Part shown: positions 6,547-19,200 of the stretch, piece after piece
How positions within the stretch are numbered: the stretch's first letter is position 1
How the letters are laid out: each line of letters opens with the position of its first letter
DNA from: Fonticula alba ATCC 38817
Lineage: Eukaryota; Protista; Nucleariida
DNA length: 64,000 bases
Assembly (NCBI GenBank): GCA_000388065.2
Contig: KB932207.1
Direction: 5' to 3' (one strand)
Notes under the pieces: generated by a model
What the model was told of the DNA's origin: nothing
Database searches by the model: none
What the model saw: only the letters and a program-made list of their open reading frames with translations
Made by a program: the position numbers and the translations under genes

Positions 6547-7169
6547 ATGCTCGCTTCTTTCAACAGCATCGCTGAGCTCGAGGCCCTCCTCGCCAAGCCC
6601 AACCTCGTGCGTGCCTCCAACTTCCTCCCCCCCTCCCCTCTCTCTCTCTCTCTCTCTCTCTCCGACGCACCGACATGGCGTGTGCCAGATTTACTGCCTC
6701 CCGACTTGCTACCTGTCGCTGACCTCTGCCCCCCTCCCCCTTCCTCGCTGCGCGCCCGCGCTCCTCATGCACACACAGACTGTCGTCGACTTCACCGCCA
6801 CCTGGTGCGGTCCCTGCCGCATGATCGGCCCCATCTTCGAGCGCTTCTCCGGCCAGTACACCGATGTCACCTTCGTCAAGCTCGACATCGACGATCCCGC
6901 CTACACCGTGCGCCCCCCCCCCCCGGCATTTCCGCCTGGCTCTCCCTCCCCGGGCTCCTCCCATCAACGCCGCTTCTCCTTGCTGACTCCCCCCCCCCGC
7001 TCCCCCATGCTCCCCGCCCCTCCCCATATGTGCCCCTCAGTCCTTCGTCCAGAAGCACAACGTCACCTCCCTGCCGACCTTCATCTTCTTCAAGAACGGC
7101 CAGGCTGTGGCTCGCTTCAGCGGTGCCGACGCCGGCACCCTCAAGCGCCACATTGAGGCCAACATGTAA
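6547..7169 (+). CDS. TRX: Thioredoxin (3 exons: 6547-6606, 6779-6907, 7041-7169; 105 aa)
   Basis: VVDFTATWCGPCRMIGPIFERFSGQYTDVTFVKLDID and NVTSLPTFIFFKNGQAVARFSGAD; canonical WCGPC; exons join in frame. Confidence 0.95.
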
Positions 7170-7745: not shown

Positions 7746-9537
7746 TCATGGGGACGGGGGAAGGGACTCCCGGTGGGCTGATAGACGCCCGGACAGCTCG
7801 CGCATCAGATTCGAGGGAACTCCGCCTGCCGTCGGGCCTGGACGCGGAGAGGCCCACCCGCCGGTGGTTGGTGGCGGGGGCGATCCCGATGGCGTGCCAC
7901 TCATCATCGCCGGGGCCGGGCTCCCCGATCCGGAGGACGGCTGTGAGGAAGATGCGCCGCTGGCTCCGCTGCCGCCAGCGGCGTCAGCCGACAGGGAGTA
8001 CGACGAGCTGGACGACCGGATGCCGAGGGATATCGAGGGGAAGGACAGCCGTAGACGGTGCTTGGGCCGGGGCTCATCGTCCGGGTGGCCGCCCATCGTG
8101 TCCACCGGGCTCGGGGTGGTGGCATTGTCATGAGAGGCAGCCCCAGCAGACACATGGCCCGGGGTCAGGGATCCCGGGGGAGGAGGATGGCCGGCCAGCT
8201 GGCTGGCTGCCGCCCCAGTCTCGGGCCGGGGCTGCGTTGTTGCTGCGGCTGCGGCCGCACCGCCGGGCATTGCATACGGCTTCGGGGGCAGAGGCAATTG
8301 GCTGGCAGAGATCGCCGGGCTGAGCCTTGGCGGGGCCGAGGGCGGCGCGGCACCATAGCCCGACGACGTGGCCGAGTACACTCCGGGCGGCGGGGCCGAG
8401 AAGGGCACCGCCGTCCCCGAGGACATGCCACTCCCGGCGGCCGGACCGCCGGTGGCCAACGAGGCCAGCGGTGGTGGTGGCGGCGGCAGCGACGTCAGAC
8501 GGCCACCGGCGTTGGGCATCGGTGAGGGGATGGCCGGGCGAGGTGACGGCGAGGCCGGTGGCTGCCGAGGCGGTGTGGTGGTGGGCCCCTGCATGGAGCT
8601 GGCGGCCGAGGCATTCGGCCGCAGCGAGAAGGACTTGCGCCGGAGCAAAGGTGAGGACTTCGAGGAAATTGGCGTTGCCAAGGGTGATCCAGGAAGATCC
8701 TCTGTGATGGGCGAATTTGTCCAAGGAGGGGGGGGGGGAGGAAGAGGGGGAACCATGACCAATCCGGGAGCGGAGGGAGGGGGCATATGTTAGAACCGCA
8801 TCACCCACACGAAAGGCGATGGAGGAAAGAGGAAGACACAAGGGCTGGGAGACAGGGCGTGAAGCAAAAGGATCAGGAGGACGCACGGGTGTCGACCTCG
8901 CGTTGGCTGGCGGACCGGCGCTGGCCATCACCGGTCGGCGTGTCGGCATTCGGCAGGGGAGAGGGCAGCGGCGAGGTGGGAGTTGAGTTGAGCTGCAAGC
9001 CAGTCTGGCGCTCGGAGGAGAGACTGCGCTCAAGCTCGGAACGCGTCACTCGGCAATAGCGGTTGAGGGCCGTCAGCTCGAGGTATGTCTCCACGATGTT
9101 GACATCCTGTGGGAAGGCACAAGAGGAAGTATGTGTGTCAGAGACGGGGAGATCTCCGCGGGGCCGGGAGGGGGGGGGGGGNNNNNNNNNNNNNNNNNNN
9201 NNNNNNNNNNNNNNNNNNNNNNNNNNNNNNNNNNNNGGGGGGGAGAGAGGGATGGGCAAGAAGAAGAAGAGGAAGAAGAAGAGGAGGAAGAAGAAGAAGG
9301 GGGCAGCTCCATCGACGCACATTCTGGTGGGCCGGGTTCGACTCGATCGAGTGCTTAAACTGGTTGAAGACGTAGCAAATGGAGGAAAGCTCGCGGTTCG
9401 GGTCGTAAGCAGTGATGATGTTGGAGTACGACTGGATTTGGGTGTAGAACTCCGGCGAGCCGGCAGTCAAGGTCTCGCTCTTGGGCTGGTGCAGGAAACC
9501 ATCGGAGACAGACTGCAAAAGAGGGCGTGGCAATCAT

Positions 9538-9576
<39 letters not shown>

Positions 9577-12500
9577 AGGGGGGACAAAATGAAGGAGCAA
9601 TAATCTGTCAGCGGGTGGCGCCTCTCCCAGGGGGCAAGTTGCATATCACCCGCGAGCTGTCCTGCGCGCCCCGGGCCACGAAGAAGTGAATGGCGAAAAC
9701 GCACCGAGATCCGGACCAGGAAGGAGCGCATCACATCGTGGCTCTCGTTGATGAAGGAGGCCACCTCTGGCACCGAGGAGAGATCCTTGAGGGACTTGTC
9801 CGGGACCAGGTTGGCCACATTCTGCACAACCTTGGCAATGAGCATGAGCGCCCGAGTGGCACGGTCGTCAGGCTGCTCGGTCACAAGGCCAAAGCTGCGC
9901 GGTGACAGCAGGGCCGGACAAAGGAGACGCAGGAAGACGAAGCCCCTGGAAGGATGGAAAGTGCCAGGACGAGGATGCGAACAGTGCAAAGGCCCCGAGA
10001 GGCAGGGCAAGCAGGAGCGAGGTGAGGGATAGTGATGAGTATGTGTGGGAAAGAGAGGGAAAGAAAGAAAAGGGCTGTTTGGCAGGGGGACGCGCGTACC
10101 CAACGCAGGTGTAGTGAGCCTTCGCATCGTTCGGGAAACGAGACATGACCGAGCTGCGGATGCGCGACAGGATGTACGATAGGTCGGCCGGGAACTGGTC
10201 CAAGTTGGTGGATGCCAAGTCAAGAAGGTTTTTGCAGGCGGTCACCAGGCGTCGGGCATTCTTGCGGAGCTCCTCGATGTCATCGACACGCGAGTTGTCC
10301 ACCTGGGCGAAGGAAAGGGGCGGTAACGTGTCAGAATGGAAACAGGAAAGAGCCCCAAAAGCCCTGGGGAGGATCCGGGCGTGTGGATCCTTGTAAATAT
10401 GTGTGCGGGAGGGAGAGAGGAGGGGGGTGTACGTGAACGCACCTCGTAGCTGAGTCGGGTGGATTGGATCGACCGAATCACCGGGCCAAGAACCGAAGCC
10501 ACGTATCCGGTTGACAGAAGACGCAGATACTGCTCGGTCATCTTGGAGGCGATGGTATTGCTGCGGAAGAGGGTGGAGGTGTTTTCTGCACATCCGTGTG
10601 TGTGTGTGTGTGTGTGTGTGCGTGTGTGTGTATGCGTGCGCATCCGGAGGAGCAGGTCAGTGCCGACTCGAGAACAGGGAACGAGAGAAAAAGGGACGGA
10701 TAGGCGGAGGGAGGAAACAGGGACAAAAGGGAAAGCTGATTGGCGCACCCGACGTGGCGATCTCATAATCGTTAATGTACTGGATTCGCTCGTTGGCCAC
10801 GCCGCGCACGGTCCAGTGGCGGACAATCAGCCGAGTAAACCGGTCGCGATCAATTCCATTCTCCTCCAGCAGGGCACGGATCGGGAAGTAGGAGGAGGGA
10901 CTGGCGATGGCGCGATCAAACTTGAAGGACATGTTCACGGGCATGACGATCTCCGGCTGGGAAAATGGGGTCAATTCTCGGTCAGTCTCTGATCATTGGA
11001 GAGGGGGAGAGAGGGGGAGAGAGAGGGAGAGAGAGGGAGGGACAGAGAGGGAGAGAGAGGGAGAGAGAGGGAGAGAGGGGGAGAGAGAGGGAGAGAGAGA
11101 GAGGGAGAGAGGGGGAGAGAGAGGGAGGGAGGGAGAGCGCGGCACTCGGGGCACAAGATATGCCCCAGCAGGAAGCGTGCGTCTGTGTGATGTGGATGGA
11201 CGGCTTTTTGCGTGGGGGTTGTTTTCTTCGAAATCGAAAGGGACCAAGCCATCCCATGTGTACCTGAAGCTCGAAGCGCAGCCGGACAGCAAAGCCGGCA
11301 GTCTGACCACCCTGGAGCTCGGCCAGGGAATTCACCGCAGAACCGATGAGACCGGACTGGATGCCATGCTCCGGGCTGCCGGTCAGCGGGAACCAGAACT
11401 CCGCCGGGTCAATCTGGGAGGTTGGCACGCCATCAGCGTTCTCCTGGACGCCAGAAACCGCCATGATCACGGCCCGCGGGATGATGACCTGACCAATGCA
11501 CACATCCTGCGCGCGGCTGGTCAGACTCGACAGACTTGTCAAGCCGGAAGCGAACACGCGCACTGTGACTGAGCGGAAGTGGGGAATATCCCTGGTTTGA
11601 ACGGGGAGGAGGGAGGGGGGAATGGTAGGAGTGTGAGAGAGACAATCCATGAGAAGCCATGAAAGAGAGAGAGAGAGAGAGAGAAAGAAAGAAAGAAAGA
11701 AGGGCCAATACACAGGGTAAAGGGGTGAAATGCGAGAGGCAGAGAGGACCACGACGCTCTTCCGATCTAAAGAAAGAAAGAAGGGCCAATACACAGGGTA
11801 AAGGGGTGAAATGCGAGAGGCAGAGAGGACTGGCAAAGAGAGAAAAAGGGACGCACTCCAAGGAGAAGGCCTCATTCCAAAGGGGGCGCCCGCTTTCCGC
11901 CCCAGGAGAATACCCACTGACCGACTGGGTGATGGCCTCGGGGAGGGTGGAGTCATCGAAGCTAAGGACGCAGTGGTAGTTGAGGTTCGACGACCGGAGC
12001 AGCGAGGAGGACAAATCCGAAGCGATGGGCAGTCCACGAGCCTCGGTCAACCGAACCAACAGGAGATCGGAAGAGCACACGTTCATTCCAAAGGGGGCGC
12101 CCGCTTTCCGCCCCAGGAGAATACCCACTGACCGACTGGGTGATGGCCTCGGGGAGGGTGGAGTCATCGAAGCTAAGGACGCAGTGGTAGTTGAGGTTCG
12201 ACGACCGGAGCAGCGAGGAGGACAAATCCGAAGCGATGGGCAGTCCACGAGCCTCGGTCAACCGAACCAACAGGCGATCACACAGCCGAGGGAAAAGGTG
12301 GAAGTCTATGGAGCAGTGCGGCGGCGATATGGATGTGTGTGTGTGGGGGGGGGGTGCAAAAAGAGGTTAGCCGCCTGTCGGTGGGATTGCACAGCATCCG
12401 GAGTCCGGAGGATGCTGAGTGGAGGGCCGCAGCAGAAGGAGTCCCATTGTACGCACTGACAGAGTCGATGTTCTTGGCCACCGACTTGAGACAGTGGATC

Positions 12501-14787
12501 CAGTTGAATGCATCGATGATATCCTCGCTGGCGAAGAAGAGAGAGCGCCCCTTCTGTGCGGAGCCGCGTGTCAGAGGAGAGGCAGACCCCGAGTTCGCCA
12601 GCGATTCGGTGGAGCCACTTTCCATGTCATTGTCATCCTGGACTCGAGCGAGGGCGACATTGGGAGACGCTGGCCAGTCGATGCAGAAAACATTCCGCCG
12701 GCCGTAGGCCGACTCATGAATGGGCCGAACGCAGGCATTAAACAGGTGGAAGGTGAACTTCGGCCGGGAGGACTGGATGTGTGCGCGTGCGCGCGTGTGT
12801 GTGTGTGTGTGTGTGTGTGTGAGAAGAGGCATACAAACAAAGGGGAGATGAAGGGGAGGGTTAGATGGCGTGCAACCCCCTCAAAGGGGGTGACGAGGAA
12901 CAACAAGAGAAGCAGGAAGCAGAAAAGCCGCGACAATGGCAATCAAGAAAACGCACGCTCTCGGACTCGAAGATGTATGCCAACTGCGTGGAGGCCATGA
13001 GCACAAAGTAAACGGAGCGCCAACCACCAGGGGCTGAGAGAAGGGCATCATAGGAGCGCGTGCAGGGGAGCAGATCGGCCAGCATATGAGTCAAACGGGA
13101 CAAAGCACAGGTCGATGGATGGAGGGGTGGTGGCGGGCAAGGAGCCAGGCAAGAGATGTGGGGAAGGGAAAGAAGAAGAAGAAGAAGAAGAAGAAGAAGA
13201 GGAGGAGGAGGAGGAGGAGGAGGAGGACAATTGTAGGCCACATACTCAGATACTGCAGACGCCCTTGGCGGAGGCTCTGCGTGAGGGAAGCAACAGAGGT
13301 GCGCAGAGTATTGTCGGAACTAGCATGCTCGGCCACGAAGGAGGCAATCTCCTCATCCTCGGAGTAGGCCCGCAGGGCCGAGTCCATGTTGGCCTGGTAG
13401 GTCATCAGTGTCGGCAAGAGCTCATGCTCAATCCTCAGGGCGGCCTGCATCTTCATCAGGGTGAACTCGATGCGATTGCGCTCCCAGCCTTCGAAGCGCT
13501 CCAGCAGCCCGGGCATCAGGTCCTCATAGTGGCTGGTTTGGCGCTCGTCGCACGTGCGCTTGGCCAGCTCCAGGGTGCTCTCCGAGAGGCGAAGCTTCTC
13601 CCGGAGCTGCTGCGTTTTGGTGGCAATCTTCGAGGGGTTGTCCCGGCGGATGACATCGATCCAGCTCCCGCCGCCAGTGCTGGAGAAGTGAGCCTGGCCA
13701 TCTGGGCCGTCGGTGCCGGATCCGCCAGTGCCGGACCCAGCCGTGGTGCCTGGCGGGAGACTCTGTCCATCCAGGGCCTCCAACTCGCGCGACAGTTTGT
13801 CATGGGCATCCTGCGCGCGTTTCAAATCGGAAAAGGCCTCTTGCAGGAAGGAGTTATACTTCTTGCCCTGGTTGACGAGCTGCGCGGCCCAGTGGGTTAG
13901 CACAGGGGGGAGGGGTGGGAGGGGAGGACGACAAAAGGGTAAATGAACGATGTAGACGCAAATGGGGCGGCGGAGAGACGAAAAGGGACGTACGCTCTTG
14001 CGCATGCTGTCGAGTTCACGAATGAAGGGGGTGAAGGGATCGACAACGAAGTTGCTCATGCGGGTGCACATTTTTTTCTGCGGGGGGGGGGGGGAGCAGA
14101 CACGGAGCAGGTGTCAGTTGTGTTGATGTCGTCGCAGAAGACAGGGAGAGGCTGCCAAGCGGGGCAGGGGCGGGGACGGGGGCGGGGGCGGGGGCGAGGA
14201 CGTACATGGGAGTCGGTGACCTCGGCCATTTGGGTCATGGAATAGAGGAAGGTGTCGAACAGATCGGACTTAGCCAGGGAGGGGAAGCGCTTGCGCACAT
14301 CGCCAACCGTCTGCGAGAGCTTGTACATCGATTTGCTGGTGTTGTCCGTTTTGGCTTGGAGTCAGCATCCGGGAGGCAGGCTCCGATGGCTGGGAGGTGG
14401 AGGGAGGAGGGGCAGGAGCATGCAGGAGAGAGCGGGAGAGGACAGCGGAGCGTCCGGAAGGGGCGAGGGAGGAGGGGGCCAGCAGAGGACAGATGCACAC
14501 CTGTATTCCTCCTCGATGGCCAGGCGGCGTTTGAAGAAGGCGACAACCTCCTTGGTGAACTCGAGGGTATCAGCTGTGTGGTTGGACACCACATCGAAGC
14601 GGTTCTGCGCAGCATGGATGTGCACGTGGGCGTATGAGTGGAGGCCGGTTAGCGGAGCAACACGCGGAAGGTGGACCACCCGGCGGAGAACGAAGAGGAG
14701 GGGAGGGGAGTGGGAGGCGGCAAAGATCTGGCCGGGGGGAGGGGCACCGGGATCAGGACGAACCGTGAGGGATTGGGCGAAACTCAT
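7746..14787 (-). CDS. F-BAR-PH-C2-RasGAP protein with Pro/Ser-rich tail (RASA1/p120GAP-type catalytic module)
   Basis: N-terminal F-BAR ([40 protein letters not shown]...[14 protein letters not shown]), PH ([55 protein letters not shown]), C2 ([19 protein letters not shown]), RasGAP with arginine finger TLFRSNT and signature [15 protein letters not shown]; more than 15 GT-AG exons. Confidence 0.9.
11001..11136 (+). repeat. Polypurine (GA/GGA) tract in a RasGAP intron
   Basis: About 135 nt of only G/A (gagagagggg/gagagagagg units). Confidence 0.9.
11750..11768 (+). other. Illumina TruSeq universal (P5-side) adapter remnant; assembly contaminant
   Basis: CACGACGCTCTTCCGATCT matches the 3' end of ACACTCTTTCCCTACACGACGCTCTTCCGATCT. 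Confidence 0.95.
12064..12082 (+). other. Illumina TruSeq indexed (P7-side) adapter remnant; assembly contaminant
   Basis: AGATCGGAAGAGCACACGT matches the start of AGATCGGAAGAGCACACGTCTGAACTCC. Confidence 0.95.
13169..13226 (+). repeat. Compound (AAG)n(AGG)n microsatellite in a RasGAP intron
   Basis: Directly visible; similar tracts at ~9255-9300 and (complement) ~25655-25710. Confidence 0.9.
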
Positions 14788-16259
14788 GACCGGATGTAGG
14801 AGGGGGCGCGAATGGCGCCCGGGCGATCGCACAGCCCGTTGGAGGAGGAGGAGGAGGGACCGGCGGGGGGAGGGAGGAGGCGCGGCAGAGGCGAGGAGGG
14901 GGGAGGGAGGGAGGGAAGTAGACCAGGCGTGCCGGGACGTGACCGAAACGCAGCTGGTGAGGGTGGGGATGAGAGGTGGGCTGGTCGGGAAGTGGCGCGG
15001 CCCGTGCTCTGCCTCCAGTGGGAAGAGACGGAGGAAAGGGCAGAGGGGGGGGGGGGAGGAAAGTCGAGAGGGGGAGCGAGAGAAAGAGAGAGAGAGACGG
15101 GGGGAGGGAGAAGGGTGGGGAGGAGGGGGAAGTGAACAGATGGGGGAGGAACAAGATGCCGTGCCGGGATGGCCCGGATGGCTCAACAGGCACGGAGTTG
15201 AATCTGGTGCTGGGTCGGGGGGCCGACGGACCACACACCGGGGGGGCGACAAGGGAGGGGGGGGGTAGTCGGCAGAGGCTGCAGGCGCCTCTGACCAGAG
15301 GGCGCGGGATCCGGCGCCCCCGGGCGGGCCAACTCCCCCCGGCGGCATCCCGGGGGAATGTCTCGACGATCTGTGGTACCCGGAGGGGTGGGAAGAGCGG
15401 GGGGGGGGGGGGGTAGCACAGGTCTGGGTGCCTCCTGCTGCGTCCAGGCCCGGCGGGAGAGGCCTCCGCCGGCCACCGCCCCCTTTGGCATTCCCTCCCG
15501 GGCCCCCTCCCCCGGCCGGGGACACAGTGGTAGGGTGCGCGTGCGTGCGGACGCGCGGGGCTGGCCGGCGCACAGCGGCACATTCGAAAGGCCGACTGTG
15601 CCAGCAACCCACACCTGCGGGCGGTCTGAAACCAGCTGCAAAAGTGGGCTCGCACCCTGGCAGCCCATGGAGTGGGGAAATTCCCCCGGGCCCGGGTGCG
15701 AGACAACAAGGTGCCAGGCCCCGTTTCACCGGGCCCGCCTCTCCCCTCCGGGCCAGGGGAAGGGCCGAGATCGCGCGCCCATCCGACCGGCCGGCCGGGG
15801 TGCGGGAGCGCGTTGCGCGAGTGGGTGTATCGGGGCATCTGTGTTTGCCCCTGACCGAAGGGCGCACGAGACCGAGCAGCGATTTCCCCCGCCCCCCCCC
15901 CCTGCCCCTGCAGGCCCTCGACCCGCGGGAGGTGGGCTGCGGGCGTATGAGCGTCTGGGCACAGGTCCGCGCACCAGACCAGCTGGAGGCGGAGATCTCC
16001 CCTCCGGGGAAGCGGGGGGGAAAGGGGGGAGGGAGACGGCCCGACGCAAAGAACCCCTGGTGCGGTGCGGAAGCGTGGCCAAGGACGCGCGCGGTTGGAC
16101 CGGGCCCACATGAATAAAGGGACGAACGAATGGGTATGAGCTGACGAGGGGCGTCGCTCCATCGGCAGTCCGTGGCCGTCCTTCGAGCATCGAGGGCAGC
16201 GGGTGCGGGGGGCGGGGGGCGCGCCTGAGACGGCGCCAGCGGTATCTGCCTGCCGCCCG

Positions 16260-16296
<37 letters not shown>

Positions 16297-19200
16297 NNNN
16301 NNNNNNNNNNNNNNNNNNNNNNNNNNNNNNNNNNNNNNNNNNNNNNNNNNNNNNNNNNNNNNNNNNNNNNNNNNNNNNNNNNNNNNNNNNNNNNNNNNNN
16401 NNNNNNNNNNNNNNNNNNCCCCCCCCCCCCCCCCCCCCCGCCCCCAGTGCCCGCCGGCTTCGCTGGGGCTACGTGCCTTCAACTCCGCCGGCGCCGCTGC
16501 GCACAGACACACCCGAGCCCGGGGATGCTCGTACCTGGGCATGCCCAGCGCCCAAGACACTCGTGAATGTGTCACTGCTCGCACCCGGCCGAGTGTGCCC
16601 GGCGAACGCGGGTGCGGCACCGGATGAAAACCAGCCGGGGGCTTAACCATGCGCACGAGCTTGTGGCGTGCGGCGGCCCTCTCTTTCTCCCGGGCCCCGG
16701 GGATGTGCGCGGTCTCATATGCAAGTGTTGGCCTCCGAGGCATGGGAGGCGTGGCCCCCCCCCGCCCTCCCATGCGCGGGCCCACCCCACCGTGCGGCCG
16801 AATCTGGGGAGCGTGCGTTGGCTAGGCGCACCTGCGCCTGCCACCGGTTGCCCGCGGGCAGGCCTCTCCCCCGGGCCTAGGCGGAGAGACCCAGGCGGTG
16901 GGCGTCGTGCCAGCGCGCCCCGGGGAGAGCGCGCCACGGAGAGCGAGAGTGAGTGAGAGATGACCTGCCAACTAGGGCCGGGCGGCGGCGGCGGGGAGTA
17001 GGGGGGGGGGGGGCGCCGTCGGTCCTGGTTGTGGGCCGGGCGGCCGAAGCCCCGCCGCCTTGGCCGGTGACCCCTCCTCCCTCCCCTCCGGGAGGGGGTC
17101 TGGGCCTTGCAGCTGTGCCCCGCCGTGGGCGTATCCTCCCGTTTGAGGGCGCGACCTCTCGCTCGTTCTGGCCCGCCCGCCCCCCCCCCCCCCAGCCACT
17201 CTCCGGCCAGAGTCTGGCCACACTCGGCCTGGGGCGCCCATACGTACGGTGCGCTTCCGCCAAGACGCTCGCCCCGGTCGGCCGAGCGCCGCCACGGGCA
17301 CCGGCCGGCCGGCCCGCGCCCAGCCGCCAGGCCCCGAGACAATGCTGCTACCAACCCGCGTGCATATCCGCACACGCCTCGGGTTTAGTTGCGCGGCCGC
17401 CTCGCACGCCGACTACCCACGGCCATCAACCGTCGGGGCATATGATGAGATTGGGCGCGCCTTTCCCCCGGCCCTCGGCCCCCCCCCTCGGCCCCCCGGG
17501 CCACACCCCGCCTGGGCGAGGAGACCACGATGCTCGGCCGGCTTGCCATACACGGGCCGGCCCGCCCTCGCGGCCCTGTGTGTGCATTCTCTCCTCGGCC
17601 ACGCGAGGAAGAGGCAATTTGTCCGCATCCGGATCCGGAACCAAGCCGCGGTCCCGAGGGTGCTCCGGCCCCCCGTCCCCCCCCCCCCCCCCCCCCGGGG
17701 TGCGCGGCGCCCCTCGCCATCCCTCCGTGAATCCCCTCAGGGGAAAGCTCACACACACACACACGCACACACGCTTGCTGGTCAGGTCCCGCGGTCCCCG
17801 GCCCCTCAGGAAAAGGGATAGACCGCGGCCATCCGTCCCACGTCGTCTGCCGCGTGGCTGGGACAGATCAAATGACCGCATTTATAGAATATATATTATG
17901 CGCCGCTCTGCCCGCGCACCATGGGGCGCCACTATCGAGAAGGACATTGGCGGCCCCCCCCCCCTTGATTTCACCTTACGCGAGCAAGCGCGCCAGAGCC
18001 CGGCGCATGCGCGCCCTGGAAGCAGGCAGCATGAAGGCAGCAGGGGCCGGCATCAGAGGAGAGCATAGTGTTGGGACGCAGCGCGCCTGGACGACCGGCC
18101 CAGCGGGCGGAGTTCGCCCAGCGAAAGCTGTGGCCATGGACGTCGACCATCCTCCTCTCCCCCCCCCCCCTCCCCCTCATGCCCCCTCGCGCTCGACTCA
18201 TGTGCACACCACGAGGTGGGGCCGGGCCTCCCCGCTCGCCGGACCGAGAATCCCGGCATGCCAAAAGCACCGGAGGGCGAGGGCATGTGGGCGGCGTCCC
18301 CCCGGGGGCCGAAGACGGCGGAAAGCAATCAGCCGGGCCGACCCCCTGGATGGCCTGATGGCCTGGGGATATTCGGTCGCCCAAGGATCGAACGCGGGAG
18401 CTGAACCCTTGCCGGGGAATGGGGGGGATTTCCCCCCCCCCCCCCATTCCCCTCCCCCCGGCACCGTTGGTGCCCTCCTGCCGCGGCTCTTTGCACCCCG
18501 GCATTTGGCCTTCATCCTGTTGAGCCGGGGAGGGAGTATTTACCGCGGGGCCACCACACCCCGGTCGGCCGGCCCGGCAGGCAGCGACCGAGGTCAGCTG
18601 CCAGGGATGCCGCGCCCCGTCTGTCTCTCTTCCTCGCCGTCTGTGTCGGTCCGTCATCGAGGACGCCTCTGTCCCCCTCGGCCTCCCTCGGTTCCGGGGA
18701 AAGAGGCACCCGGCTGCGGTATGCGCCTTTCCGACCCGTCCGGGGGACGGCCCGACTCCTGCTGCGGGACCCGCGGCGGCCGGTCGATCGGCCGGGCAGG
18801 GAAAAAAGCTGCGCCCGCCATCCCCGGGACTCCTCCGTGCCCCCCCCCCCCTCCTTTTGGTCTGTGGCCCCCATGCCCCGGTAATGGGCCCCGAGAGCAT
18901 GCCGGCCTGGGGGGGGGGGAGATCACTGTGCCTCCCGCGTCGCCCACCGGCCTGTGGGTCGCACTGGTACCGAGACAGCGCGAGGAATGCTCTCTCGGCG
19001 GGGGACCCGGCGGGCCCCGCCCCCAGGCGAATCGTAATATTGTCCCCGCCCCCCTGCCTGAGCCCATATGCCCCAGGCATGCCAACCTCGCTGGCTGATC
19101 CCCACCCGCTTGTCTGCCTTCCCCGAGGCCGTCGGACGGCCGCGTTCCTCCCAAGGCCGCCGCACGGCCGCGTTGCTCCCGAGGCCTTGACACGCAGTCG

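What the first reader, a model, noticed from the sequence alone, without database searches (positions are those of the whole stretch)
7746..14787. F-BAR-PH-C2-RasGAP: a p120GAP/RASA1-type GAP whose SH2-SH3-SH2 module is replaced by a membrane-bending F-BAR
Seen: an F-BAR ([13 protein letters not shown]...[13 protein letters not shown]) spliced in frame to PH, C2 and RasGAP with intact arginine finger and FLR signature. The PH and GAP text tracks RASA1 closely (W+..YF.L......L..FESE...+PK....L..C.V..+H+S.+GR.N.F.I; GFVFLRL.CPA.L.P). Established: animal F-BAR-GAP fusions (srGAP, GMIP) carry RhoGAP, not RasGAP, and RASA1 is recruited via phosphotyrosine. Inference: curvature-recruited Ras inactivation, e.g. 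at macropinocytic/phagocytic cups, in a lineage with little tyrosine-kinase signalling.
Basis: partly seen in the sequence, partly recalled or inferred. Interest (0 to 1): 0.75.

Follow-up and report, generated by a model that had tools for sequence, protein, structure and literature searches.

The report
F-BAR–PH–C2–RasGAP gene of Fonticula
The amoeba Fonticula alba has one real, expressed gene that joins a membrane-binding F-BAR domain to the PH-C2-GAP core found in human p120RasGAP; this domain combination turned up in no other protein, but the gene is already in public databases as an unnamed protein, and a Dictyostelium protein (RGBARG) already shows the BAR-plus-RasGAP idea.

Summary
Window 7746-14787 (minus strand) holds one 16-exon gene. 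Its spliced CDS translates exactly to NCBI hypothetical protein H696_04547 of Fonticula alba (1365 aa).

- **Transcripts:** spliced contigs from four 2012 runs (two samples, one study) remove the introns. Single contigs run from the F-BAR exon through PH, C2 and RasGAP into the tail.
- **Assembly gap:** the N gap at 9182-9236 lies inside intron 9107-9320 and breaks no frame.
- **Artefacts:** a 211-nt tandem duplication in the C2 exon, and an 81-nt one in the next intron, each have Illumina adapter remnants at the junction. The transcripts carry a single copy of the first, so both are read as assembly artefacts.
- **Domains:** F-BAR is supported by Pfam FCH (44 bits), by PDB hits that are almost all F-BAR domains, and by a three-long-helix model that matches FBP17/CIP4. 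The PH-C2-GAP part aligns in one piece with a RASA1-type protein (E 4e-37). Its best solved match is the p120RasGAP C2-GAP structure. The arginine finger, the FLR motif and the C2 W/R Ras-contact patch are all conserved.
- **Relatives:** no other protein with FCH plus RasGAP appeared in any search.

Recruitment by membrane curvature at engulfment cups is untested. In Dictyostelium RGBARG, the nearest precedent, the BAR domain did not concentrate at curved membrane. I rate this a new variant of a known kind, of moderate interest.

The parts
7746..14787 (-). Whole CDS of H696_04547 (1365 aa): 16 exons and 15 GT-AG introns
   Evidence: The spliced translation is identical to P0001.
13264..14787 (-). 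F-BAR domain, about residues 1-320. Encoded by exons 1-4 (14787-14764, 14604-14501, 14335-14206, 14077-13994) and most of exon 5 (13879-13246). A disordered Gly/Ser/Thr loop at about 155-195 lies between the second and third long helices.
   Evidence: Pfam FCH PF00611 scores 44.2 bits against a cut-off of 27.8, over residues 11-81. PDB phmmer hits are FBP17, Imp2, CIP4, FCHo2, GMIP, GAS7 and Cdc15. The AF2 model has three long helices at pLDDT 74.9. Foldseek gives FBP17 at 3e-8 and CIP4 with TM 0.61/0.73.
12457..13263 (-). PH domain, about residues 321-452. Strand beta1 is at the end of exon 5; the rest is in exon 6 (13033-12957) and exon 7 (12772-12457). It carries a disordered insert of about 40 residues (387-426).
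   Evidence: Pfam PH scores 25.0 bits in the whole protein (cut-off 25.1) and 30.5 bits when the domain is scanned alone. The AF2 model gives a beta-sandwich plus a C-terminal helix. It aligns with the PH of the RASA1-type protein P0009.
11264..12305 (-). C2 domain, about residues 457-645. Encoded by exon 8 (12305-12083 continued by 11871-11857) and exon 9 (11591-11264). W602 and R639 are the equivalents of RASA1 W689 and R707.
   Evidence: There is no Pfam C2 hit. The region is collinear with the Pfam-positive C2 of P0009. The AF2 model gives a beta-sandwich. Foldseek aligns 9bz4 C2-GAP over about 505 columns and also hits isolated C2 domains at E about 2e-5. W and R are invariant in alignment A1.
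11872..12082 (.). Artefactual 211-nt tandem duplicate of the C2 exon. An Illumina adapter remnant sits at 12064-12082. This stretch is not part of the mRNA.
   Evidence: The copies are 196/197 identical. The junction on the minus strand reads ACGTGTGCTCTTCCGATCT. Transcript contigs and P0001 hold one copy only.
11750..11830 (.). Second artefactual duplicate (81-nt period) inside intron 11856-11592. Its junction carries the adapter remnant AGATCGGAAGAGCGTCGTG (minus strand).
9321..10956 (-). RasGAP domain with its C-terminal helices, about residues 646-974. Encoded by exons 10-14 (10956-10749, 10585-10443, 10302-10100, 9945-9705, 9512-9321). The arginine finger R722 is in LFRSNT. The FLR motif is at 834-836. 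The [12 protein letters not shown] helix follows.
   Evidence: Pfam RasGAP scores 116.6 bits. The alignment to p120GAP is shown. FR, FLR, K and Q are invariant in A1. Foldseek hits 1wq1, 1wer and 9bz4.
9182..9236 (.). Assembly gap (N x 55) inside intron 9107-9320. It does not touch the coding sequence.
   Evidence: Joint 9105/9320 (cut +1) is seen in contigs of all four runs. The intron reads GTGCGT..CACAG.
7746..9106 (-). C-terminal region, residues 975-1365. Exon 15 (9106-8887) is followed by exon 16 (8701-7746), which encodes a 318-aa low-complexity tail: 20% Pro, 19% Ser, three runs of at least four prolines, and an RRKSFS motif.
   Evidence: Translation and composition are. Intron 8886-8702 is supported by identity to the NCBI model. 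The laid stretch started at 8900, so the reads did not show this intron directly.

Best explanation
This is one expressed gene of Fonticula alba (H696_04547). It encodes a 1365-aa Ras-family GTPase-activating protein with the layout F-BAR, PH, C2, RasGAP, Pro/Ser-rich tail.

Shown: the gene model, the splicing, the four domains, and the conserved catalytic residues and C2 Ras-contact residues.

Inferred mechanism: F-BAR domains are obligate crescent dimers that bind acidic membrane. The protein should therefore sit on the inner face of the plasma or endocytic membrane as a dimer carrying two GAP units. The PH domain abuts the F-BAR without a linker and would add phosphoinositide selectivity. 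The C2-GAP pair then switches off Ras or Rap by the arginine-finger mechanism, with C2 helping catalysis as in p120RasGAP. The proline-rich tail probably recruits SH3, WW or EVH1 partners.

In short, the membrane-targeting job that phosphotyrosine/SH2 does in animal RASA1 would be done here by direct lipid binding through the F-BAR-PH unit. The likely sites are protrusions and engulfment or endocytic membranes of this bacterium-eating amoeba.
For: - **Gene model:** identical to the public protein.
- **Expression:** spliced contigs appear in 4 runs. X1 record 1 (4169 nt) runs from beyond 8900 to beyond 13879. Exactly 77 letters separate 12772 from 13246, which is the length of exon 12957-13033.
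- **One gene, not two:** exon 5 encodes both the last F-BAR helices and PH strand beta1 (residues 321-326). Pfam PH starts at profile position 15 at residue 328.
- **F-BAR:**
- **PH-C2-GAP of RASA1 type:**
- **Catalytic and contact residues:** R722, FLR 834-836, and C2 W602/R639 are invariant in A1. The role of the W689/R707 patch is described in PMC11831179.
- **F-BAR basic pair:** the FBP17 alignment puts query K33/R35 under 'VKER' of FBP17. That this pair binds lipid in FBP17 is my recollection, not a tool result.
- **Precedent:** a BAR + RasGAP protein shapes engulfment cups in an amoeba, RGBARG (PMC7416115).
Against: - No biochemical or localisation data exist for this protein.
- Pfam does not call the C2. 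The structural models are of medium confidence (pLDDT 68.5 and 74.9, from alignments of 6 and 5 sequences).
- Dimerisation and lipid binding of the F-BAR were not tested.
- In RGBARG the BAR domain was not enriched at curved areas, so curvature sensing cannot be assumed.
- The substrate (Ras, Rap or an Rsr1-like GTPase) is unknown.
- The joints 13246/13033 and 12957/12772 were not listed in the joint table. They are inferred from contig offsets and from the NCBI model.
Confidence: 0.75

Rival explanations
1. The fusion is an annotation or assembly chimera. On this view an F-BAR gene and a separate PH-C2-RasGAP gene lie head to tail and are joined only by read-through or by contig assembly.
For: The assembly is poor here: there are adapter-bounded duplications and N gaps. 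The joint 13246/13033 is not in the listed joint table. In run X3 the F-BAR part lies on a separate 858-nt contig.
Against: Contigs of X1, X2 and X4 run continuously from the GAP exons into 13246-13879, with exactly 77 letters in between. The intron is a canonical GTATGT..CAG of 212 nt and is in frame. There is no stop, start or intergenic space. PH strand beta1 is encoded on the F-BAR exon, so a separate downstream gene would have a truncated PH and no start codon.
Confidence: 0.03
2. The architecture is real, but the F-BAR is not a curvature sensor. It serves as a general plasma-membrane anchor, a dimeriser or an autoinhibitory module, as found for the BAR of RGBARG. Spatial specificity would then come from PH-lipid binding, from Ras binding by the GAP domain, and from partners of the tail.
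For: In RGBARG the isolated BAR domain bound the whole plasma membrane, was not enriched at curvature, and was masked by neighbouring domains (PMC7416115). Here the F-BAR and PH abut without a linker, like BAR-PH units. The Atlas feature search of residues 1-460 returns BAR-PH families (a lead only).
Against: Many F-BAR domains of the FBP17/CIP4 type, the best matches here, do tubulate membranes. This is from established knowledge and was not tested here.
Confidence: 0.4
3. The GAP acts mainly on Rap or on an Rsr1/Bud1-like GTPase rather than on Ras proper. It would then work in polarity, adhesion or cytokinesis, where many fungal F-BAR proteins act, rather than in engulfment.
For: SynGAP, which prefers Rap1 (PMC11831179), and a fungal C2-GAP protein (P0011) are also clear relatives. 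RGBARG is dual Ras/Rap. The F-BAR matches include the cytokinesis proteins Imp2, Cdc15 and Hof1, and the best Atlas structural match is a fungal FCH-DEP-RhoGAP cluster.
Against: The GAP and PH sequences are closest to RASA1, a Ras GAP. Sequence alone does not fix the specificity of RasGAP domains.
Confidence: 0.25

Closest known systems
p120RasGAP / RASA1 (animals and other holozoans)
   Same: The PH-C2-RasGAP core is collinear. It is the best sequence match (121 bits to 9bz4) and the best fold match. PH motifs are shared (W.S.YFVL, YIFESE, HES..GRRNVF). The C2 W/R patch, the arginine finger and FLR are conserved.
   Different: There is no SH2-SH3-SH2 module; an F-BAR sits in its place. The PH and C2 carry long disordered inserts. 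A 318-aa Pro/Ser-rich tail follows the GAP. Identity is only about 25%.
RGBARG of Dictyostelium discoideum (RCC1-RhoGEF-BAR-RasGAP; PMC7416115)
   Same: A BAR-superfamily membrane-binding domain and an active RasGAP domain lie in one polypeptide of a phagocytic amoeba. It is the functional precedent for membrane-anchored Ras shut-off at cups.
   Different: RGBARG has a classical BAR, not an F-BAR. It also has RCC1 and RhoGEF domains. No PH-C2 module is named in that paper's domain description. The lineage (Amoebozoa) is unrelated, so any likeness is convergent. I did not compare the sequences here.
F-BAR-RhoGAP proteins (srGAP, GMIP/HMHA1, yeast Rgd1/Rgd2, Dictyostelium MEGAPs)
   Same: An N-terminal F-BAR is followed by a GTPase-activating domain. 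GMIP and Rgd1p F-BAR structures are among the fold matches, and the best Atlas structural match is a fungal FCH-DEP-RhoGAP cluster with TM 0.62.
   Different: Their catalytic domain is RhoGAP (PF00620), which is a different fold and targets a different GTPase family from RasGAP (PF00616).
SynGAP/DAB2IP family and fungal C2-RasGAP proteins (e.g. Steccherinum EIP91_008915)
   Same: PH-like, C2 and RasGAP domains occur in the same order. The alignments are significant (E 1e-15 to 6e-25).
   Different: They score lower than RASA1 and have a different PH type (PF25321). They have no F-BAR, and the fungal protein has no room for one before its C2.

Membership tests
F-BAR (FCH + extended coiled coil) domain | FCH motif scoring above Pfam's gathering threshold | tested here: met
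   PF00611 scores 44.2 bits against 27.8, over residues 11-81. Exon 2 alone scores 30.2 bits.
F-BAR (FCH + extended coiled coil) domain | A bundle of about 300 residues with three long helices that superposes on solved F-BAR domains | tested here: met
   The AF2 model has helices 3-59, 67-154 and 196-287 at pLDDT 74.9. The first 19 Foldseek hits are all F-BAR domains; APPL BAR-PH and other BAR domains begin at rank 20. About 300 columns align, with TM 0.5-0.73. By sequence, the second half is in register with FBP17.
F-BAR (FCH + extended coiled coil) domain | Crescent homodimer with a basic concave face that binds or bends membrane | not testable with these tools
   Only the alignment of query K33/R35 under FBP17 'VKER' is seen. 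No dimer model or lipid assay was possible.
RasGAP catalytic domain | PF00616 above threshold, with an arginine finger (FRxxT) and the FLR motif | tested here: met
   116.6 bits. R722 lies in LFRSNT and FLR is at 834-836. Both are invariant in A1 and align to p120GAP.
RasGAP catalytic domain | Stimulates GTP hydrolysis on a Ras-family GTPase | not testable with these tools
   This needs a biochemical assay.
RASA1 / p120RasGAP family | N-terminal SH2-SH3-SH2 module | tested here: not met
   There is no SH2 or SH3 hit in P0001. The same scan finds them in the RASA1-type protein P0009.
RASA1 / p120RasGAP family | Collinear PH-C2-GAP core that is closer to RASA1 than to other RasGAP families | tested here: met
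   One BLASTP alignment of 590 columns, E 4e-37. PDB ranking is RASA1 121 bits, SynGAP 95, NF1 79. Foldseek's top hit is 9bz4. No full phylogeny was made.
RASA1 / p120RasGAP family | Conserved C2 surface that contacts Ras (W689, R707) | tested here: met
   W602 and R639 fall in invariant columns of A1. The definition of the patch is from PMC11831179. The D687 equivalent is Glu.
C2 domain | Pfam C2 (PF00168) profile match | tested here: not met
   Residues 455-640 give no hit at E 0.01 or better.
C2 domain | Eight-stranded beta-sandwich fold placed immediately before the GAP domain | tested here: met
   The AF2 model has strands between residues 463 and 649, mostly at pLDDT 50-80. Foldseek aligns 9bz4 C2-GAP over about 505 columns. 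Isolated C2 domains match at E about 2e-5 with TMt 0.65-0.77.

The most novel reading that the evidence does not exclude
F-BAR-PH-C2-RasGAP is a Fonticula-lineage invention that wires direct membrane-shape or lipid sensing to Ras shut-off, convergently with Dictyostelium RGBARG. It would also show that the p120RasGAP PH-C2-GAP core predates the split of animals and fungi, and that the phosphotyrosine (SH2) front end of animals is only one of several interchangeable targeting modules.
Probability: 0.35. Interest if true: 0.55.

Novelty: new variant of a known kind. Interest (0 to 1): 0.4.

Why it matters
Where and when Ras is switched off shapes the protrusions and engulfment cups of amoeboid cells. 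Animals aim p120RasGAP through phosphotyrosine. Fonticula sits on the fungal side of the opisthokont tree and has little tyrosine-kinase signalling. It seems to aim the same catalytic core through an F-BAR-PH membrane module.

This gives a natural experiment in swapping the targeting module of a GAP. It is also a second, independent case, after RGBARG, of a BAR-family domain fused to a RasGAP. And it is evidence that the RASA1-type PH-C2-GAP core is older than animals.

It is a single protein in a single species, and domain shuffling among GAPs is common. The interest is therefore moderate.

Tried and rejected
- **Single-exon Pfam scans:** these gave only fragments. FCH and RasGAP were found; PH and C2 were missed. 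They were superseded once the full protein P0001 was recovered.
- **Search for the same architecture elsewhere:**
  - phmmer with the big F-BAR exon against 1.84 billion representatives found itself and four weak, short F-BAR-like fragments without RasGAP.
  - Word searches with the whole protein, with 326-910 and with 1-330 found no second protein holding PF00611 plus PF00616. These searches are insensitive, because only 8000 candidates are scored.
  - A metagenome scan with residues 200-470 found nothing.
  - ESM Atlas feature searches gave only RasGAP or BAR-PH clusters scoring below 0.9.
  - The Atlas structure search gave a fungal FCH-DEP-RhoGAP cluster.
- **Literature:** searches for F-BAR/FCH with RasGAP, and for Fonticula with RasGAP, found no description of such a fusion.
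- **PDB:** phmmer with PH-C2 alone found nothing.
- **Earlier notes:** a word search of the scan's own findings found nothing.
- **The 211-nt duplication:** I considered that it was a real exon duplication. I rejected this because of the adapter sequence at the junction and the single copy in transcripts.
- **ORF 14362-16785:** I read the long minus-strand ORF (807 aa) as an effect of GC-rich sequence. The transcript-supported start exon is 14787-14764.
- **Not done:** a proper RasGAP phylogeny, because too few reference sequences could be obtained.
Full report
**What is there.** The minus strand of window 7746-14787 carries a multi-exon gene in GC-rich DNA (58-73% GC) with short introns. Scanned as single exons, exon 2 already passes Pfam's FCH threshold (30.2 bits) and two exons hit RasGAP (47.8 and 23.8 bits).

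**Expression and gene model.** Four public 2012 runs (two samples, one study) hold about half of the sampled words of this stretch. When laid on 8900-14850, their contigs skip ten stretches. Nine of these have CT..AC ends on the plus strand, which is GT..AG for a minus-strand gene, so the runs are RNA.

Single contigs connect 8900-9105, 9320-9512, 9705-9944, 10099-10299, 10749-10956, 11264-11591, 12083-12305, 12457-12772 and 13246-13879, and then run on further. One example is X1 record 1, 4169 nt long.

The joints 13246/13033 and 12957/12772 are not in the joint table, because rows at repeats were dropped. However, the contig has exactly 77 letters between 12772 and 13246. That is the length of the GT-AG-bounded exon 12957-13033.

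From these joints and the sequence I built a 16-exon CDS. It translates without a stop to 1365 aa and is letter-for-letter identical to P0001. The exhaustive search had returned P0001 as the only strong hit. The word search names it 'hypothetical protein H696_04547 [Fonticula alba]' in NCBI and 'Ras-GAP domain-containing protein' in UniRef.

The last intron (8886-8702) lay outside the stretch I laid reads on. It rests on the NCBI model and on its consensus GTGCGT..CAG ends.

**The assembly gap.** N 9182-9236 lies within intron 9107-9320. Contigs of all four runs skip this intron, and the frame continues as NPAHQN|DVNIVETY in P0001. The gap has no bearing on the protein.

**Assembly artefacts.** The C2 exon appears twice, at 11872-12068 and 12083-12279, with 196 of 197 bases identical. 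At the junction the minus strand reads TGGAATGA-ACGTGTGCTCTTCCGATCT-CCTGTTGG. The middle part is the 3' end of an Illumina adapter.

The transcripts hold one copy. In them, 12083 is followed by 15 letters equal to 11857-11871 (table 5c). P0001 likewise needs 11872-12082 removed.

A second duplication, with an 81-nt period (11688-11749 and 11769-11830), has AGATCGGAAGAGCGTCGTG at its junction and lies inside an intron. I read both as assembly artefacts.

**Domains.** On the full protein, Pfam gives FCH at 11-81 (44.2 bits), PH at 328-450 (25.0 bits against a cut-off of 25.1; 30.5 bits when the domain is scanned alone) and RasGAP (116.6 bits). It gives no C2.

*F-BAR.*
- phmmer of residues 1-330 against PDB sequences returns FBP17 (1.5e-7), Imp2, CIP4, FCHo2, GMIP, GAS7 and Cdc15. 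A second stretch (219-272) is in register with FBP17.
- An AF2 model (pLDDT 74.9) has long helices at 3-59, 67-154 and 196-287, with a disordered Gly/Ser loop at about 155-195.
- The first 19 Foldseek hits are all F-BAR domains. They align over about 300 columns with TM up to 0.73.
- The best Atlas structural match is a fungal FCH-DEP-RhoGAP cluster with TM 0.62.

*PH-C2-GAP.*
- Residues 330-914 align in one BLASTP alignment (590 columns, E 4e-37) with P0009. Pfam reads P0009 as SH2-SH3-SH2-PH-C2-RasGAP. One member of its cluster is named 'Ras GTPase-activating protein 1'.
- Among solved structures the ranking is RASA1 C2-GAP 9bz4 at 121 bits, SynGAP at 95, NF1 at 79 and IQGAP at 29.
- An AF2 model of 320-960 (pLDDT 68.5) shows a PH sandwich with its C-terminal helix, a second beta-sandwich, and the helical GAP domain.
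- Foldseek's best hit is 9bz4, aligned over about 505 columns, which covers both C2 and GAP. Isolated C2 domains also match at E about 2e-5.
- In a six-sequence alignment, the invariant columns include the arginine finger (F721-R722), FLR (834-836), K868 and Q871 of the alpha7 helix, and W602 and R639 of the C2. The last two correspond to RASA1 W689 and R707, the centre of the C2 surface that contacts Ras and raises kcat (PMC11831179).

**Is it one protein?** Exon 5 (13879-13246) encodes residues 115-326. That covers the last F-BAR helices and also strand beta1 of the PH domain (321-326 in the model). Pfam's PH match starts only at profile position 15, at residue 328. Cutting the gene at intron 13245-13034 would leave a truncated PH with no start codon. 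Together with the continuous contigs, this makes the 'two genes' reading very unlikely.

**How it probably works (inference).**
- F-BAR domains are dimeric, membrane-binding crescents.
- With the PH domain abutting it, the N-terminal 450 residues should form a lipid-binding unit that holds two C2-GAP units on a membrane.
- There the GAP would inactivate Ras or Rap.
- The 318-aa tail is 20% proline, with PPPPPP and PPPP runs. It looks like a docking region for SH3, WW or EVH1 proteins of the actin machinery.

Whether the F-BAR reads curvature is open. In RGBARG, the one studied BAR + RasGAP protein, the BAR domain bound the whole plasma membrane and was not enriched at curved regions. Positioning at the cup rim needed the GAP and GEF domains as well (PMC7416115).

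**Comparison and novelty.** The core is RASA1-like, but the defining SH2-SH3-SH2 module is absent, so the protein is not a RASA1 family member in the architectural sense. A basidiomycete relative (P0011) aligns over C2-GAP (E 6e-25), with a weak PH-like match at its residues 103-124. It has no room for an F-BAR. This suggests an old opisthokont PH-C2-GAP core with lineage-specific front ends, rather than a literal 'replacement' of the SH2 module.

No second protein combining FCH and RasGAP appeared in any search, and no paper describing one was found. These searches were not a true architecture query, so absence elsewhere is not proven.

The protein and its two Pfam hits are already in public databases, without a name. 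F-BAR-RhoGAP and BAR-RasGAP fusions are both known. I therefore rate this a new variant of a known kind, with moderate interest.

Noticed in passing
window 11872-12082 and 11750-11830: Two tandem duplications (211-nt and 81-nt periods) have Illumina adapter remnants at their junctions: ACGTGTGCTCTTCCGATCT and AGATCGGAAGAGCGTCGTG on the minus strand. These are adapter-mediated misassemblies in the public genome. Other windows of this assembly may hold more.
   Followed up: yes
window about 6547-7160, + strand (WCGPC motif at 6782-6817): A thioredoxin-like coding stretch (VVDFTATWCGPCRMIGPIF) lies convergent with the GAP gene's 3' end. It seems to be split by introns.
   Followed up: no
window 8886/8887: The transcript contig of run X2 ends about 14 nt below 8900, right at the donor site of the last intron. 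The contigs of X1, X3 and X4 run on for about 1170-1185 nt. This may reflect a mix of spliced and intron-retaining molecules at that intron.
   Followed up: partly
window 9540-9585, 10587-10646, 10999-11140, 12774-12829, 13150-13235: Long (GA)n/(CT)n, (TG)n/(CA)n and (CTT/CCT)n microsatellites fill most introns of this gene. They caused the read-laying tool to drop some joints.
   Followed up: no
P0001 residues 387-426 (window about 12550-12670) and 150-195 (about 13640-13775): Disordered Gly/Ser/Asp-rich inserts sit inside the PH domain, between its strands, and between the second and third long helices of the F-BAR. They are absent from the animal and fungal homologues in the alignments.
   Followed up: partly
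window 14362-16785, minus strand: An 807-aa stop-free ORF overlaps exon 2 and runs upstream across an N gap (16297-16418). It is Pro/Gly/Arg-rich and looks like a by-product of about 70% GC. Nothing supports it as coding.
   Followed up: no
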